A stretch of 64,000 nt of DNA, taken from assembly GCF_006345805.1 (NCBI RefSeq), contig NC_043008.1, positions 49,910,001 through 49,974,000 on the forward strand, in the 5' to 3' direction. Shown here one piece after another: positions 1,135 to 48,190 of this stretch. The notes under the pieces were generated by a model. The model saw only the letters and a list, made by a program, of their open reading frames with translations, was not told the origin of the DNA and ran no database searches. The DNA comes from Octopus sinensis (taxonomy: Eukaryota). Within the stretch, counting starts at the first letter, position 1. Each line of letters opens with the position of its first letter. Made by a program: the position numbers and the translations under genes.

Positions 1135-1356
1135 CACAACTTTCTCTCACTCTTTCTTCCTGTTTCTGTTGTACCTGTACTTCAAAGGGCCGGCCTTGTC
1201 ACTCTCTGTGTCACGCTGAATATCCCTGAGAACTACGTTAAGGGTACACGTGTCTGTGGAGTGCTCAACCACTTACACGTTAATTTCACGAGCAGGCTGT
1301 TCCGTTGATTCGGATCAACCGGAACCCTCATCATCGTAACCGACGGAGTGCTTCCA
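1131..1356 (+). mobile_element. SINE fragment (family C tail)
   Basis: Reverse complement matches 29805-29960 (gggttccagttgacccgatcaacgg ... gacaaggctggccctttgaaatacaggtacaac). Confidence 0.75.
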
Positions 1357-1358
1357 TA

Positions 1359-1406
<48 letters not shown>

Positions 1407-1410
<4 letters not shown>

Positions 1411-1912
1411 CTCCAAATGTCATCGAAGCCAGAAACCATCTAAAGTCTATATCTCTAGCTTACCACCGTTCTTCATCCCAGTCACTGAAGATCCAACTTA
1501 TAACTGCCAAGAAGAATCTTGATGTTGCTTACTTGAACGCCGAGGTCGACTTTGTAAACGGCAAAATTAGCAACCTATCTAAAGAGTACATTAGTAAAAA
1601 ACACCATCTCGCCTGGAAATCCATCAAAGACCTTTCAGGCAAAAAGTCTGGGTCATCAATTAGAATTAAAGGGGGATCAGCTAAGAAGCGTTTAGAAAAT
1701 TGGTCAATTCATTTTAAAAAACTTCTTAGGAAGAATGCCAAAATCCCTGATAACCCCACTCTTCCAAGTGTGCCTATATCAGATACGCTGGACATCAACA
1801 CCTCCCCTTTTACCATATTTGAACTAACAGCAGCCACTAAACAACTGAAAGCCTCGAAAGCATTTGGTCCCGACAACATCCCAGCTATAATTTGGAAGGA
1901 TGATAGATTTCA
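1407..1912 (+). mobile_element. Non-LTR retrotransposon ORF2 fragment (linker between endonuclease and RT), inserted between (TA)n and (TG)n
   Basis: Open frame ending ...SPFTIFELTAATKQLKASKAFGPDNIPAIIWK. KAxGPDxIP is the usual motif just before LINE RT domain 0/1. Confidence 0.8.
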
Positions 1913-1913
1913 C

Positions 1914-1949
<36 letters not shown>

Positions 1950-9726: not shown

Positions 9727-9896
9727 TTATAAAAAGTGATTCGGAAAAGAAGATATTTGGAAGGATTTCAGAGATCAACGGTGTCACGGTTCACCTGGCC
9801 GGTGCTGAGTTTTCCTATATGCGGCTCAAAAAGGGTTTGTGTCCAGGACAATGCATATTCAGCAAAGGAACCACCAATGAAAGTGTAACAGTTGAG
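9727..9896 (+). CDS. ADAMTS-like protein (ADAMTSL4/THSD4 type), internal exon, ADAMTS spacer domain
   Basis: Acceptor (t)13cag| and donor |gtaagt. 170 nt, phase 1 in, phase 0 out. xIKSDSEKKIFGRISEINGVTVHLAGAEFSYMRLKKGLCPGQCIFSKGTTNESVTVE fits the spacer motif AGxxFxY...GPTxExxxxE and joins in frame to the exon at 25744. Confidence 0.85.
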
Positions 9897-14570: not shown

Positions 14571-14804
14571 ATAATGCGCTGGCGTGGCTGTATGGCTGTA
14601 TGGTAAGAAGCTTCCTTTTCAACCGCATGATCCCGGGTTCAGTCCCACAGTGTGACACCTTGGGCAATTCTACCTGTACAACGGAACTTGTACAGGTATA
14701 ATTATACATGGTATTATACAGGTATAATTATACATTTCAAATTGCAGCTTTCCAATAGTATCCGTTTGTCTTTTACGACTGCTGAAGTGCACTAAAGTGT
14801 TATA

Positions 14805-15857
14805 ATGGAGGCCGCTGAATGCAGATCAGTGATCAGGTTCTTATACTTAAAAGGTGGGACACCAAAAGAGACTTTCGACGAGATGAAAGAAATTTATGGT
14901 GACGATGCGCCATCATACGACGTAGTCAAGCATTGGCATCGTCAGTTCAAATACGATCGGACATCGGTGGAAACTACTCCTATTCCTGGACGACCACATT
15001 CCGCCATTGATGACGACACCATCCATAAAGTGGAAACCGCCTTTTTCGAGGATTGCGGCATAACTATTCGGGAACTAACCCAAGAAGTGAAGATAAGTAT
15101 AGGGTCCGTAAAAAAAAGATCATTCATGACCATTTGCACATGCGGAAGTTGTCTGCATGATGGATTCCCCGGATGCTCACACCTTTTCAGAAGCAGGAAC
15201 AAGTCAATTGCTCCCAGCTTCATTCGGCAATGTGCCAAGAAGATGAGAAGGACTTATCCGGCAGACTTATCACATAGGATGAAACATGGCTCCATTACTA
15301 TGATCCTGAGGCAAATGTCCAGTCGAAGCAATGGAAGCATCATAACTCGTCACCTCCAAAGAAAACTCATGTCAAACCCTCAGCAGGCAAGGTGATGCTC
15401 ACAGTCTTTTGGGACCAGTGCAGAGTAGTGATGATGGATTTTTTGGCAAAGGGCACCACAGTTAACGGAGTATATTATGCTTCTCTGCTGTCGAAATTGC
15501 GGGACGCCATCAAAGCAGAGAGGCGTGGCTTGCTGACCAAAGGAGTTCGCCTCCTCCGAGACAACGCCCCAGTTCACAATGCGCATGTTGCCCAGATGAA
15601 AGTACACTCCTGCGGCTGTGAAATCTTTCCTCATCTTCCTTAGTGTCCCAACCTCGCACCATCTGAGTTTCCACCTCTTTCCATCCATGAAGTCTTTTTT
15701 GAAAGGAAAAGACTTTTCAGATGATGAACTTATTTCCGAAGTAAAGTCTTGACTCCAGACGCAACCTACCGACTTCTACGGACGAGGCCTTCACAGCAGC
15801 ATAAGGCGATGGGAGAAGTGTGTCACCGTTGGTGGTGGCTATGTAGAGAAGGTCTAA
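14805..15857 (+). pseudogene. Mariner transposase pseudogene
   Basis: MEAAECRSVIRFL..., GRP, DETW-like, KVMLTVFWD, DNAPVH and PNLAPS motifs across several frames, ending ...GGGYVEKV* at 15857. Probable right TIR remnant near 15905-15928. Frameshifts and stops present. Confidence 0.92.
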
Positions 15858-25743: not shown

Positions 25744-26787
25744 ATTGTGTACGTCAACAACAATCCTGGCATTACGTTTGAGTTTTACGAACCAAAAGAG
25801 AACACGTCTTCTAGCCATCACAATCAAACGCAACCGGGTGTATATGACACACCACAAAATCAACAGCCGTATCTACACAACGGTGAACTGAGAAGGCGCT
25901 ACCCTCCGTATGGCTCACAACAATACGCTTGGAAAAACACCGGCAGATATCAACATCGGGGCTACGCTCCTCCTAAAAATCGTTTACCTGGACATAACAA
26001 CATTAGTCATGCGACCTACTACAGAAGACCAAAGTTGCCTTACCATCGCCCTTCTCCGTATAATAGCCGACCATACAGACATTATCTACCAGGGGTGCCT
26101 CCTATCGTTCCTCCCAACACCCAGACAAGACTAACATCACGGGAGAACAGAACTAAAACACAGTTATACAACAACTGGAACCGAGGATTACGTCATCCAG
26201 TGATTATCCCTTCGAGAAATCCCGTTGATTACAATAGAGTTAATTATAGACATTATCCCAGGATAATTCCGAACCGAATAAACAACCGACACATCTATAA
26301 TCCCAGGATTAACAAACAACATTTTCCGAGAATCCCGCCAAGACACGACTATAAGAATAAACCTTTACTTCCGGGAAACAGAGATTTGAGTGTGAAACAG
26401 CACCCAAGATTTATTGAACACAGTGAGAAAATTAATTTACAGCACAGCACCGTTCCAGAAAAAAGAACTCATTTGATAGACGAAAATTCTAATACAGTAG
26501 AATTTTATGATTGGAAAATTGCTGGATTTACCGAATGCTCGAGGACATGCGGGGGTGGCATCCAACAAACCCGGATAGTCTGTGTCAAAATCAAAAGTCA
26601 AGTTACAGTGACAGCAGATAATTGTAACAATTCAACTGTGCCGGCGAAGCAAAAAGTCACATGTAACACGGGGCCTTGTCAGCCATCGTGGCAGACTGGC
26701 AACTGGTCTTCGTGCAGCACCAGTTGTGGGCCTGGCACCCAGACGCGAACCATAGAATGTACACAAATACTATCACCATCCACAACG
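25744..26787 (+). CDS. ADAMTS-like protein exon: end of spacer, 240-aa low-complexity insert, TSP1 repeat 1 and part of repeat 2
   Basis: Acceptor ttatctttgcag| and donor acg|gtgagt. 1044 nt, phase 0/0. IVYVNNNPGITFEFY...DWKIAGFTECSRTCGGGIQ...CNTGPC...WQTGNWSSCSTSCGPGTQTR. Confidence 0.95.
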
Positions 26788-33892: not shown

Positions 33893-34282
33893 TTATTCTT
33901 TCACTTGTTTCAGTCATTTGACTGTGGCCATGCTGGAGAACCGCCTTTAGTCGAGCAAATCGACCCCGGGACTTATTCTTTATAAGCCTAGTACTTATTC
34001 TATCGGTCTCTTTTTGCCAAACCGCTAAGCTACGAGGACGTAAACACACCAGCATCGGTTGTCAAGCGATGTTGGGGGGACAAACACAGACACACAAACC
34101 TATACGCACACATACATATATACGACGGGCTTCTTTCCGTCTACCAAATTCACTCACAAGGCTTTGGTTGGCCCGAGGCTATAGTAGAAGACAATTACCG
34201 AAGGTTCCACGCAGTGGGACTGAACCCGGAACCATGTGGTTGGTAAGTAAGCTACTTACCACACAGCCACTCTTACGCTTAT
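33893..34282 (-). mobile_element. Full-length SINE family A nested in the MITE
   Basis: Colinear with 21177-21590, with a short internal microsatellite. Confidence 0.85.
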
Positions 34283-34291
34283 AAAAAAGAT

Positions 34292-34408
34292 ACTTACAGC
34301 ACCTAGGTTTCCAATGCGGTCACCCATCTAAGTACTAACTAGGCTCGATGTTGCTTAACTTCGGTGATCGGACGAGAACCGGTGCTTTCAACGTGATATG
34401 TCCGAGCC
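34292..34408 (-). pseudogene. 5S rRNA pseudogene, near full length, followed by T6
   Basis: Minus strand cggacatatcacgttgaaagcaccggttctcgtccgatcaccgaagttaagcaacatcgagcctagttagtacttagatgggtgaccgcattggaaacctaggtgctgtaag is recognisably 5S with several substitutions. TTTTTT follows within a few nt. Confidence 0.88.
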
Positions 34409-40610: not shown

Positions 40611-41066
40611 CTGAAAGTTTCCGCAGAAAGATGCAACAAGACACCGAGACCAGCGGCTGTACGGCAGTGCCAAAACAACCCGTGTGGAAAATGGCTGGTG
40701 AAGGCGTGGGGCAGATGCAAACCAGAATGCGGCCAAGGAAGCAGAAGAAAGAGATTAGTCAAGTGTGTTAGCCCACATTTAGGAACGTCGATACCAGGAC
40801 GTTTCTGTCCCAAACCCAAACCTCACAGAACAGAATTATGTCAGGCACAGCATTGTCCCCCGAAATGGTACGTTTCCAAGTGGTCCAATAAGTGTTCTAG
40901 TAACTGCGGTTCAGGATTTACCACAAGGCAGGTGATTTGTGTTTCAAATGAAGGCAATTTACTGTCATCTTCACGCTGTGATCGTGAGAAAAAGCCCGAG
41001 TTCAAGACTCCATGCAGCAGCAGTCATCCTTGCGGAGGGATATGGTTCACCGGAGCGTGGAGTGAG
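40611..41066 (+). CDS. ADAMTS-like protein exon: TSP1 repeats 2 (end), 3, 4 and start of 5
   Basis: Acceptor attttttcag| and donor gag|gtaaga. 456 nt, phase 0/0. LKVSAERCNKTPRPAAVRQCQNNPCGKWLVKAWGRCKPECGQG...WYVSKWSNKCSSNCGSG...WFTGAWSE. Confidence 0.95.
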
Positions 41067-42524: not shown

Positions 42525-42704
42525 TGTTCTGCTGATTGTGGTAAGGGACAACGGACCCGAGAGGTCGCTTGTCTCAAGAAGTTCGGCCTCAATTCACTAC
42601 ATGTTGTTTCCGAGGAGAATTGCCAAGACGAGAAGCCTGTTACTCAAGAAAACTGTGTTGTTTCTTCATGTGATACAGACTGGTTTCTCACGGAATGGAG
42701 CGAG
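42525..42704 (+). CDS. ADAMTS-like protein exon: TSP1 repeat 5
   Basis: Acceptor ttttggttctag| and donor gag|gtaaat. 180 nt, phase 0/0. CSADCGKGQRTREVACLKKFGLNSLHVVSEENCQDEKPVTQENCVVSSCDTDWFLTEWSE. Confidence 0.93.
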
Positions 42705-46357: not shown

Positions 46358-46504
46358 TGCAGTTCAACTTGCGGAGAAGGACAGCAAACCAGACAAGTAA
46401 AATGTTTCAATAAAAATTTAAACCGTCAACCAACTGTACTGAAATGCCACCCAAAACCAAGAAATGTAATCTTCACAGCTGCCGGGTGCCCTCGACCAAA
46501 ATTG
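46358..46504 (+). CDS. ADAMTS-like protein exon: TSP1 repeat 6, with an apparent 1-nt deletion near 46417-46423
   Basis: Acceptor ctgaattgtag| and donor ttg|gtaagt. Frame 0 gives CSSTCGEGQQTRQVKCFNKNL. The rest of the TSP1 pattern (PSTNCTEMPPKTKKCNLHSC) is in the -1 frame, which also supplies the phase 1 required by the last exon. Confidence 0.9.
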
Positions 46505-48059
46505 GTAAGTATTGATTTATAGATTGGTTGGTTGCCTGATTTATGGTTTATGTTGTTGCTTTTCAATGTTTAGTTCAGTATTGTAATGAACCACATATGA
46601 AGATTTGTCATTATTCATCCATCCATCCATCCGTATATACATCTAGACATATAAACTGATATTTCACAAGGTATAAAACAGAGAAACAGTCAGAGTATCA
46701 CACAAGGAGTCTGCACTTGAAACTTGGATGCCGGTACTGTCTGCCGCTGAACAAGAATGGGAAACCATTGCTACTTATAGATGTGTTACGAAGTGAATAA
46801 GGCATGCATTGATCATGCATCGCATTTGCACTGGAGGGGTATCCATGATAAAAACCATGGAACATGAACATACCGAATCACTTGTGTAATTAAACGAACG
46901 ATCGCAATTAAAATTGGAGAATCTTTGCCAATGCTTACATTAAACATTTGGAAAGTTTTTGTGCCAACAAAATATAGCAAATCATCTCAATATAACAATG
47001 ATTTCATTGAAGTGTATTCACAGCTAGAGTCACTGTGTTTTATATTTCCATAAAAAGATGATTGCCACAAGAAATTCATCAAAGATGCTGTGGTATTTGT
47101 TCAACAAATGTTGCCAATCAAAATTTAACTGTAATTTATTATTTCTTAGATAAAGCATTGAAACATGGTTTCATAGTGTTGTCTAATATGGAAAAAAAAA
47201 CAATTTAATTTGCTCTGAGATAATTTTAACTTGAAGAGATGTAGGTGATTTTTTTTAAATTGAAGCAGGCAAATTCTAAAGCTTTACTTACCAAAAGTGG
47301 TATCATTGAGACATAATAATTGGTAATATCAAACTGTGAATAAACTTGATATCTCGTTTATTTGGGATCACATAAACCAATTCATTAGAGAGTATAATTT
47401 ATCACAGTCCTAATTGTACTCTCTCCTTAATGATGGGTAGAATCTTAATCTAAAGTAATTTTACTTAAAAGCCCTATTTCTGATTTGCTTGGATTTATCA
47501 CTCCATTTGGGAATTTTATTTTAAATAAAGTTTTCATGACATTTCAAAAATTGAAATTCAAGATGTCAATTCTTGTCTTGAACACAAATTTTAGTTGTCA
47601 TTGTTTCTAATTTGGTTCAGAGCATTCCATTACCTTTAATATAAAAGTTTTGATTTATTGAAACATTTGAACAAATGTATGATGTGTAATCTTTAATAAT
47701 TAAATATATCTTCTCCATTATTATGTACTAAGTCCTTTGAGTTCTCAGAATAGTTTCATATACAACAAATGCTCTTTAAAGTAATAATTCTTTCTAATAA
47801 AGTCACAAGGCCTGACATTTGAAGGAAGAGGCTAGTACTCAAATGGTACTTATTTCAGCAAATCTCATGTCAGGTGAAGTCGACCTCGGCAGAATTTGAA
47901 CTCAGAACATAAAGATGGACGAAATGCCCCTAAGAATTTTGGCCAGGTCACCACCTTCCCCTTTAAAGTAATTATAAATAGAAATATAAGTTTCCTTTTA
48001 AAATTATGATAAATATTAATATATTGTTTTGACTATGATTTTTTTTTTCGTCCTTTCAG

Positions 48060-48190
48060 ATCACTCTTGTATTGACAGATATGGACATAAAAACTGCCAG
48101 CTTGTGATGAGAGCCCGCTTATGTAACAACCCTGTCTATAAACAGAAGTGCTGTGTCACATGTTCACAACAGAACTCTTCGCTCCACTGA
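48060..48190 (+). CDS. ADAMTS-like protein last exon: PLAC domain and stop
   Basis: Acceptor ttttcgtcctttcag|, phase 1. xHSCIDRYGHKNCQLVMRARLCNNPVYKQKCCVTCSQQNSSLH* has the six-Cys PLAC pattern. Confidence 0.93.

What the first reader, a model, noticed from the sequence alone, without database searches (positions are those of the whole stretch)
46358..46504. Frame break in TSP1 repeat 6 exactly at an in-frame U_UUA_AAC slippery heptamer
Seen: frame 0 reads ...CFNKN-TTA-AAC and then loses the TSP1 pattern. Spliced as is, it stops 15 codons into the last exon and the PLAC domain is lost. A -1 shift at T_TTA_AAC (46417-46423) gives LNPSTNCTEMPPKTKKCNLHSC and the correct phase for PLAC. Known: U_UUA_AAC is the coronavirus -1 frameshift heptamer. 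A weak by-eye pseudoknot follows 10 nt later (CUG..UGAA/UUCACAG with CACCC/GGGUG), with atypical loop sizes. The most likely explanation is a missing A in TTTAAAAC (Leu-Lys-Pro), either an assembly error or a loss-of-function allele. Programmed frameshifting giving PLAC-minus and PLAC-plus forms would be new for this family.
Basis: partly seen in the sequence, partly recalled or inferred. Interest (0 to 1): 0.72.

Follow-up and report, generated by a model that had tools for sequence, protein, structure and literature searches.

The report
One-base deletion, not programmed frameshift
The frame break is one missing G in the Octopus sinensis reference copy of an ordinary matrix-protein gene, most likely a sequencing or assembly error or else a broken allele, and the "slippery" ribosome-shifting motif is a side effect of that missing base.

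Summary
In detail: exon 46358-46504 is 147 nt, T_TTA_AAC (46417-46423) is in the zero frame, frame 0 stops 15 codons into the last exon, and a -1 shift restores TSP1 repeat 6 and PLAC.

The window is Octopus sinensis GCA_006345805.1, CM016870.1:49,910,001-49,974,000. This assembly was built from PacBio reads. The gene is LOC115217908, a THSD4/ADAMTS-like gene, and its RefSeq protein carries exactly the truncated frame-0 tail.

All relatives read this exon in one frame:
- O. vulgaris and O. bimaculoides have CFNKEFKPSTNC.
- Argonauta hians has CFNKDFKPSSNC.
- Three decapodiform cephalopod sequences (one is the cuttlefish Acanthosepion), a limpet and an annelid are also uninterrupted.

The DNA alignment shows AATAAA-AATTTAAACC in the window against AATAAAGAATTTAAACC in O. 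bimaculoides. The missing base is the G of a Glu codon between 46414 and 46415, not an A inside TTTAAAAC.

The heptamer is the conserved Phe-Lys-Pro codons (TTT AAA CCN), pushed into slippery register by the deletion just upstream. The downstream RNA folds worse than shuffled sequence, and the by-eye pseudoknot is no better than chance.

Verdict: a simple deletion, with assembly error somewhat more likely than a real allele. Programmed frameshifting is about 2% likely. Interest is low.

The parts
9727..9896 (+). Upstream coding exon (part of the ADAMTS spacer, residues ~89-145 of the Argonauta orthologue). Exons for residues 1-88 lie outside the window or were not detected.
   Evidence: tblastn of P0009 against the window; splice sites read.
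25744..26787 (+). Large exon: end of the spacer, a ~300-aa Asn/Pro/Arg/Tyr-rich linker, TSP1 repeat 1 and the start of repeat 2. Phase 0 at both ends.
40611..41066 (+). Exon with the end of TSP1 repeat 2, repeats 3 and 4, and the WxxW start of repeat 5.
42525..42704 (+). Exon with the body of TSP1 repeat 5 and the WxxW start of repeat 6. It ends in phase 0.
46358..46504 (+). Exon with the body of TSP1 repeat 6. It is 147 nt here, 148 nt in O. bimaculoides and 163 nt in Argonauta (both 3n+1).
46414..46415 (+). Site of the missing base. Relatives have a G between these two A's (AAA GAA TTT). It corresponds to CM016870.1 49,956,414/49,956,415.
   Evidence: DNA alignment A2; coordinates.
46417..46423 (+). 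TTTAAAC. It is read T_TTA_AAC in the window's frame 0. In relatives it is the conserved Phe-Lys-Pro codons TTT AAA CC.
48060..48190 (+). Last exon. The PLAC domain is in the ancestral frame (phase-1 acceptor, stop TGA 48188-48190). Frame 0 reads ITLVLTDMDIKTASL.
48105..48107 (+). Premature TGA reached by the frame-0 reading. This is the stop used by RefSeq model XP_029643486.1.

Best explanation
The frame break is a single-nucleotide deletion in the Octopus sinensis reference assembly. The G of a conserved Glu codon (AAT AAA GAA TTT AAA CCG) is absent, which leaves AATAAAAATTTAAACCG. The gene is an ordinary secreted THSD4/ADAMTS-like gene: spacer, linker, six TSP1 repeats and PLAC.

Most likely the deletion is a consensus error of the PacBio-based assembly in an A/T-rich, low-complexity stretch (A3-G-A2-T3-A3). 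In that case the animal makes the normal PLAC-containing protein and nothing is recoded.

The slippery heptamer is a by-product. The conserved codon-aligned TTT AAA C falls into X_XXY_YYZ register after any one-base deletion upstream. A -1 slip there then necessarily returns to the original frame.

Shown: the deletion relative to the relatives, the register shift, and the lack of downstream structure. Inferred: that the deletion is an assembly error rather than a real allele. The confidence of 0.57 is for the assembly-error reading alone. A plain deletion without recoding, whether error or real allele, has about 0.95.
For: Identity of the window:
- Window 1-49107 is identical to the O. sinensis GCA_006345805.1 locus of XP_029643486.1.
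- That RefSeq protein ends with exactly the frame-0 tail.

Relatives are uninterrupted:
- O. vulgaris (three isoforms) and O. bimaculoides (two models) read CFNKEFKPSTNC...PLAC.
- Argonauta reads CFNKDFKPSSNC.
- Three decapodiform sequences (two Logan transcript clusters and Acanthosepion pharaonis THSD4), Lottia and Owenia are also continuous.

The missing base:
- DNA alignment A2 places one gap in the window opposite a G in both O. bimaculoides and Argonauta.
- Exon length is 147 nt here, against 148 and 163 nt in those two species.
- With the G restored, the spacing between the cysteines equals that of all cephalopod orthologues.

Context:
- O. vulgaris diverged from O. sinensis only about 2.5 My ago (PMC10700109).
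- The assembly is PacBio plus Hi-C (Li et al. 2020, as cited in PMC10318165, and PMC10700109).
- The ancestral frame downstream of the break is intact. All PLAC and TSP1 cysteines are present, and there is one conservative difference from O. vulgaris in 71 residues.
Against: - No reads could be inspected, so an error cannot be told apart from a real allele of the sequenced animal.
- The lost base is a G between two A runs, not a pure homopolymer-length change, which is the commonest long-read error.
- NCBI did not flag the model as a LOW QUALITY PROTEIN with an inserted base. This may mean that the transcript evidence available then did not contradict the genome, or that there was none.
- O. 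vulgaris DNA could not be fetched. Only its protein shows the Glu codon.
Confidence: 0.57

Rival explanations
1. The deletion is real. It is a heterozygous or fixed one-base deletion in O. sinensis that truncates the protein. TSP1 repeat 6 is left with five cysteines, a 43-residue nonsense tail follows, and PLAC is lost. This would be a loss-of-function or hypomorphic allele without any recoding.
For: - The assembly sequence itself.
- The RefSeq model was not corrected by NCBI.
- Marine invertebrates are highly heterozygous and an assembly picks one haplotype (general knowledge).
- The intact downstream frame fits a very recent mutation as well as it fits an error.
Against: - TSP1 repeat 6 and PLAC are conserved from annelid to octopus. 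Loss in one lineage within 2.5 My is therefore a priori rarer than a consensus error in a PacBio-based assembly.
- There is no other sign of decay in the gene. All other exons are in frame and 99% identical to O. vulgaris.
Confidence: 0.38
2. Programmed -1 ribosomal frameshifting at U_UUA_AAC yields a PLAC-minus frame-0 protein and a PLAC-plus shifted protein.
For: - A canonical heptamer sits in the correct register, and a -1 slip restores the TSP1 repeat and PLAC.
- The premature stop lies in the last exon, so nonsense-mediated decay is not expected (inference).
Against: - The register exists only because of a deletion just upstream. In O. bimaculoides the same letters are codon-aligned, in Argonauta they read TTTAAGC, and in decapodiforms CTGAAAC.
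- All relatives use one continuous frame.
- The downstream RNA is less structured than shuffles.
- The by-eye pseudoknot is matched by 15-18% of shuffles and has a 19-nt junction loop.
- No Rfam frameshift element was found.
- The slip product changes the conserved Glu-Phe-Lys to Asn-Leu-Asn.
- The frame-0 tail has no homologue and leaves an odd number of cysteines.
Confidence: 0.02
3. The frame is restored by another route: alternative splice sites, transcriptional slippage or RNA editing.
For: None was found. This reading was considered only because coleoid cephalopods edit RNA heavily (general knowledge).
Against: - No alternative AG or GT gives a 3n+1 exon while keeping CSSTCGEG and PLAC in frame.
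- Skipping the exon also breaks the phase.
- A-to-I editing does not insert bases.
- The A5, T3 and A3 runs are far shorter than known transcriptional slippage tracts (general knowledge).
Confidence: 0.01

Closest known systems
Residual single-base indels in long-read genome assemblies that frameshift gene models
   Same: One base is absent relative to every relative, in an A/T-rich low-complexity context. The assembly is PacBio-based. The annotated protein is truncated and lacks a conserved C-terminal domain.
   Different: This was not verified with reads. The lost base is a G flanked by A runs rather than a homopolymer-length change.
Coronavirus-type -1 programmed frameshift signal (U_UUA_AAC, spacer and pseudoknot)
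   Same: The heptamer letters are identical and in X_XXY_YYZ register. A -1 slip yields a longer, domain-complete product.
   Different: There is no stimulatory structure above chance. The register is not conserved even in a species 2.5 My away. The register was created by an upstream deletion. The frame-0 product is not a recognisable functional protein end.
THSD4 (ADAMTSL6) and the ADAMTS-like proteins
   Same: ADAMTS spacer, six ADAMTS-type TSP1 repeats and a C-terminal PLAC, with no protease domain. Relatives are named THSD4 or THSD4-like by their sources.
   Different: Pfam finds no N-terminal TSP1 or cysteine-rich module before the spacer in the full-length orthologues. There is a cephalopod-specific ~300-aa Asn/Pro/Arg/Tyr-rich linker.
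Cellular -1 frameshift genes of animals (PEG10, PNMA/Ma3 type)
   Same: They would be the only precedent for -1 frameshifting in an animal nuclear gene.
   Different: Those genes derive from retroelements, with gag-pol-like overlapping frames that are conserved across species and followed by a structure (own knowledge). None of this holds here.

Membership tests
-1 programmed ribosomal frameshift site | Slippery heptamer X_XXY_YYZ in the zero-frame register | tested here: met
   T_TTA_AAC at 46417-46423; the offset in the exon is 59, and 59 mod 3 = 2.
-1 programmed ribosomal frameshift site | Stable stimulatory hairpin or pseudoknot about 5-9 nt downstream | tested here: not met
   MFE is -6.3 kcal/mol for 81 nt, against a shuffle mean of -10.4 (z = +1.75; 197 of 200 shuffles fold as well). 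The pseudoknot candidate is at the 15-18% level of shuffles. There are no Rfam matches.
-1 programmed ribosomal frameshift site | Heptamer, its register and the two-frame organisation are conserved in orthologues | tested here: not met
   O. vulgaris, O. bimaculoides, Argonauta, three decapodiform sequences, Lottia and Owenia all have a single frame. The heptamer is out of register or absent.
-1 programmed ribosomal frameshift site | The zero-frame product is a meaningful protein end | tested here: not met
   The frame-0 tail matches only 42 of 55 TSP1 positions, leaves five cysteines and has no homologue among the relatives.
-1 programmed ribosomal frameshift site | Measured frameshifting (reporter assay, ribosome profiling or peptide) | not testable with these tools
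   No expression or read data are available.
ADAMTS-like (THSD4/ADAMTSL) proteins | ADAMTS spacer followed by ADAMTS-type TSP1 repeats, with no metalloprotease domain | tested here: met
   Pfam on the O. vulgaris orthologue P0158 gives ADAMTS_spacer1 at 77-172 and six TSP1_ADAMTS, with no Reprolysin. The O. sinensis product has the same families on record. Six TSP1 stretches were found in the window's translation.
ADAMTS-like (THSD4/ADAMTSL) proteins | C-terminal PLAC domain | tested here: met
   PLAC scores 38.8 bits in the ancestral (-1) frame of exon 48060-48190. It is lost in frame 0.
ADAMTS-like (THSD4/ADAMTSL) proteins | N-terminal TSP1 repeat and cysteine-rich module before the spacer | tested here: not met
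   Pfam finds nothing N-terminal to the spacer in the full-length P0158. The 5' exons are not in the window.
Assembly indel artefact | Base absent relative to close relatives, with the reading frame otherwise intact | tested here: met
Assembly indel artefact | Assembly built from error-prone long reads | tested here: met
   GCA_006345805.1 is the assembly of Li et al. 2020, made with PacBio sequencing and Hi-C.
Assembly indel artefact | Accurate reads of the same individual contradict the assembly at the site | not testable with these tools
   No read data are available. Look-ups of flanking ORFs in read-derived (Logan) contigs found nothing.

The most novel reading that the evidence does not exclude
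The G deletion is real in O. sinensis. Unprogrammed low-level -1 slippage at the newly in-register U_UUA_AAC, just downstream of the deletion, rescues a fraction of full-length PLAC-containing protein. This would be a snapshot of how a cellular frameshift site could be born from a deleterious indel next to a Phe-Lys codon pair.
Probability: 0.02. Interest if true: 0.65.

Novelty: not a real feature. Interest (0 to 1): 0.07.

Why it matters
It matters little for biology. The practical point is annotation quality. RefSeq XP_029643486.1 (O. sinensis LOC115217908) is a truncated, PLAC-less model caused by one missing base. That LOC name has already been passed on to the Argonauta hians annotation.

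The case also shows a general trap. Any one-base deletion upstream of codon-aligned XXX YYY Z codons produces a perfect in-frame slippery heptamer whose -1 slip restores the gene. Such heptamers next to frame breaks are therefore not evidence for programmed frameshifting.

Tried and rejected
- A single-sequence homology search with the 279-aa C-terminus found only a sturgeon protein and missed the 99%-identical octopus proteins. The exhaustive representative search and an alignment query found them.
- A third search with an exon-6 alignment returned nothing.
- Exact look-ups of window ORFs in read-derived contigs, meant to see the site in independent data, all failed: the 386-aa exon ORF and the 46-aa and 41-aa ORFs that flank exon 6. 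No ORF of 30 aa or more spans the site.
- O. vulgaris DNA could not be obtained. P0158 is not on record and the P0234 gene range is too long.
- A scan of metagenome contigs for either version of the site found nothing.
- A search for a second frameshift in the O. sinensis copy found none. The different N-terminus of the RefSeq model is a first-exon choice, not an indel.
- Alternative splicing, exon skipping, RNA editing and transcriptional slippage were rejected on the sequence.
- A literature search on octopus ADAMTS genes gave nothing relevant.

Full report
**1. The observation**

The exon is bounded by AG|TGC at 46358 and TTG|GTAAGT at 46504 and is 147 nt long. All upstream coding exons that I could place are in phase 0. 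These are 25744-26787, 40611-41066 and 42525-42704.

The last exon starts at 48060 after a polypyrimidine tract and CAG. It reads the PLAC domain only if it receives one base from the previous exon (G|AT = Asp).

In frame 0 the codons are AAT(46415) TTA(46418) AAC(46421), so TTTAAAC at 46417-46423 is in X_XXY_YYZ register. Frame 0 continues without a TSP1 pattern, enters the last exon as ITLVLTDMDIKTASL, and stops at TGA 48105-48107. A -1 slip gives ...CFNKNLNPSTNCTEMPPKTKKCNLHSCRVPSTKIDHSC... and PLAC.

Pfam agrees with this reading:
- The shifted product is a full TSP1_ADAMTS match (1-55/55, 51.2 bits) plus PLAC (38.8 bits).
- The frame-0 product matches only positions 1-42 (43.1 bits) and has no PLAC.

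The -1 frame has a TAA at 46411-46413. Any repair by one added base, or by a slip, must therefore fall between 46414 and about 46434.

**2. The RNA side**

The 81 nt left in the exon after the heptamer, and 120 nt of spliced mRNA, fold less stably than dinucleotide shuffles. The z-scores are +1.75 and +1.79, and 197 of 200 shuffles fold at least as well.

However, the first stem has a 3-nt bulge and the junction loop is 19 nt. In a crude stack-energy scan for H-type pseudoknots, 15-18% of shuffles had a candidate at least as good.

Rfam finds no frameshift element, either at gathering thresholds over the window or at E up to 10 over the exon.

In-frame XXXYYYZ heptamers are common in this A/T-rich gene. 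There are four in 609 codons, three of them in this exon.

**3. Where the window comes from, and what the gene is**

A first homology search was nearly empty. An exhaustive search of cluster representatives then found a 798-aa protein of the octopod Argonauta hians and a 766-aa protein from transcript contigs.

An alignment query then found the Octopus cluster:
- O. vulgaris CAI9731401-03
- O. bimaculoides XP_052828021.1 and XP_014791388.1
- O. sinensis XP_029643486.1, "uncharacterized protein LOC115217908"

The O. sinensis locus (GCA_006345805.1, CM016870.1) is identical to the window over all 49,107 shared bases. This places the window at 49,910,001-49,974,000. The O. sinensis RefSeq protein ends ...CFNKNLNRQPTVLKCHPKPRNVIFTAAGCPRPKLITLVLTDMDIKTASL, which is exactly the frame-0 reading.

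The full-length orthologues consist of a signal peptide, an ADAMTS spacer, a long Asn/Pro/Arg/Tyr-rich linker, six ADAMTS-type TSP1 repeats and PLAC. They have no protease domain. Sources name the relatives THSD4 or THSD4-like. The exons for the first ~88 residues are not in the window.

**4. The decisive comparison**

All relatives read TSP1 repeat 6 and PLAC in one frame:

| Species or source | Sequence at the break |
|---|---|
| O. vulgaris, O. bimaculoides | CFNKEFKPSTNCTEMPPKTKKCN... |
| Argonauta hians | CFNKDFKPSSNC |
| Logan decapodiform transcript cluster P0015 | CLDNNLKPSQNC |
| Logan decapodiform transcript cluster P0159 | CLDKELKPSMSC |
| Acanthosepion pharaonis (THSD4, in the P0159 cluster) | CLDKELKPSESC |

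Lottia, Owenia and a sturgeon protein are likewise colinear across the break.

At the DNA level:

| Source | Sequence |
|---|---|
| Window (O. sinensis) | AATAAA-AATTTAAACCG |
| O. bimaculoides | AATAAAGAATTTAAACCA |
| Argonauta | AATAAAGACTTTAAGCCG |

The orthologous exon is 148 nt in O. bimaculoides and 163 nt in Argonauta, both 3n+1, against 147 nt here.

The missing base is therefore the G of a Glu/Asp codon between 46414 and 46415. It is not a fourth A inside TTTAAAAC. The ancestral reading is Asn-Lys-Glu-Phe-Lys-Pro.

The letters TTTAAAC are present in O. bimaculoides too, but there they are codon-aligned (TTT AAA C, exon offset 60, register 0). In Argonauta and the decapodiforms the motif is TTTAAGC and CTGAAAC.

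The in-frame slippery heptamer is thus a mechanical consequence. A one-base deletion upstream of codon-aligned XXX YYY Z always puts those codons into X_XXY_YYZ register, and a -1 slip there always restores the old frame. The slip product would also replace the conserved Glu-Phe-Lys by Asn-Leu-Asn. That Lys is invariant in every cephalopod orthologue.

**5. What it most likely is**

[quoted passage not shown] The O. sinensis assembly was made from PacBio reads and Hi-C (Li et al. 2020, as cited).

Downstream of the break the ancestral frame is fully intact. It differs from O. vulgaris by one conservative residue in 71. No other exon is frameshifted.

This pattern fits a consensus error in a low-complexity stretch (A3-G-A2-T3-A3). 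It also fits a very recent real deletion carried by the assembled haplotype.

I rate the two readings as follows:
- Assembly error: about 0.57.
- Real allele: about 0.38.

Two points count against the error reading. The lost base is not a pure homopolymer-length change, and NCBI did not issue a corrected "low quality" model. I could not inspect reads, and all routes to read-derived contigs for this site failed.

Together, a plain deletion without recoding has a probability of about 0.95. Programmed frameshifting has about 0.02. Other rescue routes (splicing, editing, transcriptional slippage) are excluded by the sequence or by principle.

**6. Comparison with what is known, and verdict**

The site shares with the coronavirus-type signal only the seven letters and their register. 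It fails the tests for a stimulatory structure, for conservation and for a meaningful frame-0 product.

The gene is an ordinary member of the ADAMTS-like/THSD4 group. It has a lineage-specific linker and lacks a recognisable N-terminal TSP1 and cysteine-rich module.

The finding is not a new biological feature. Its practical value is to flag a truncated RefSeq model, and to warn against reading slippery heptamers next to frame breaks as recoding signals. Interest is 0.07.

The most novel reading still open is a real deletion partly rescued by spontaneous slippage at the adjacent heptamer. I give it about 2%.

Noticed in passing
window 46358-48107; RefSeq XP_029643486.1 (P0235): The public RefSeq protein of O. 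sinensis LOC115217908 is the frame-0 truncated product without PLAC and is not flagged as low quality. The Argonauta hians protein GAB1605979.1 has been named after this LOC.
   Followed up: yes
window 34291-34407 (-): A full-length 5S rRNA match (89.8 bits, E = 5.8e-18) lies inside the 14-kb intron. It is single-copy in the window and directly abuts a SINE-like repeat. It could be a dispersed 5S gene or pseudogene, or the head of a 5S-derived SINE.
   Followed up: partly
window 33901-34290, with copies near 216, 6919, 11239, 12445, 14593, 18861, 21195, 25350, 35334, 38965 and 39336: A ~390-bp interspersed repeat is present in at least ten diverged copies (68-86% identity) on both strands across the introns and the upstream region.
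   Followed up: partly
window 14796-15640 (+): A decayed mariner/Mos1-type transposon. The HTH_48 and Transposase_1 (DDE) domains lie in different frames.
   Followed up: partly
window 25744-26787 (+): A ~300-aa Asn/Pro/Arg/Tyr-rich linker lies between the spacer and TSP1 repeat 1. It contains blocks conserved from Octopus and Argonauta to decapodiforms, such as VDYNRVNYRHYPRIIPNRINNR. It has no Pfam match and its function is unknown.
   Followed up: partly
window 1284-1946 (+): A 221-codon open frame that ends in ...FGPDNIPAIIWKDD and looks like a LINE ORF2 fragment. It has no Pfam match at E of 0.001 or better and is interrupted by microsatellites.
   Followed up: partly
tool behaviour: The word-indexed protein search missed 99-100% identical octopus proteins with a single-sequence query and with a short alignment query. 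It found them with a three-sequence full-length alignment. Empty results from that tool should therefore not be read as absence.
   Followed up: no
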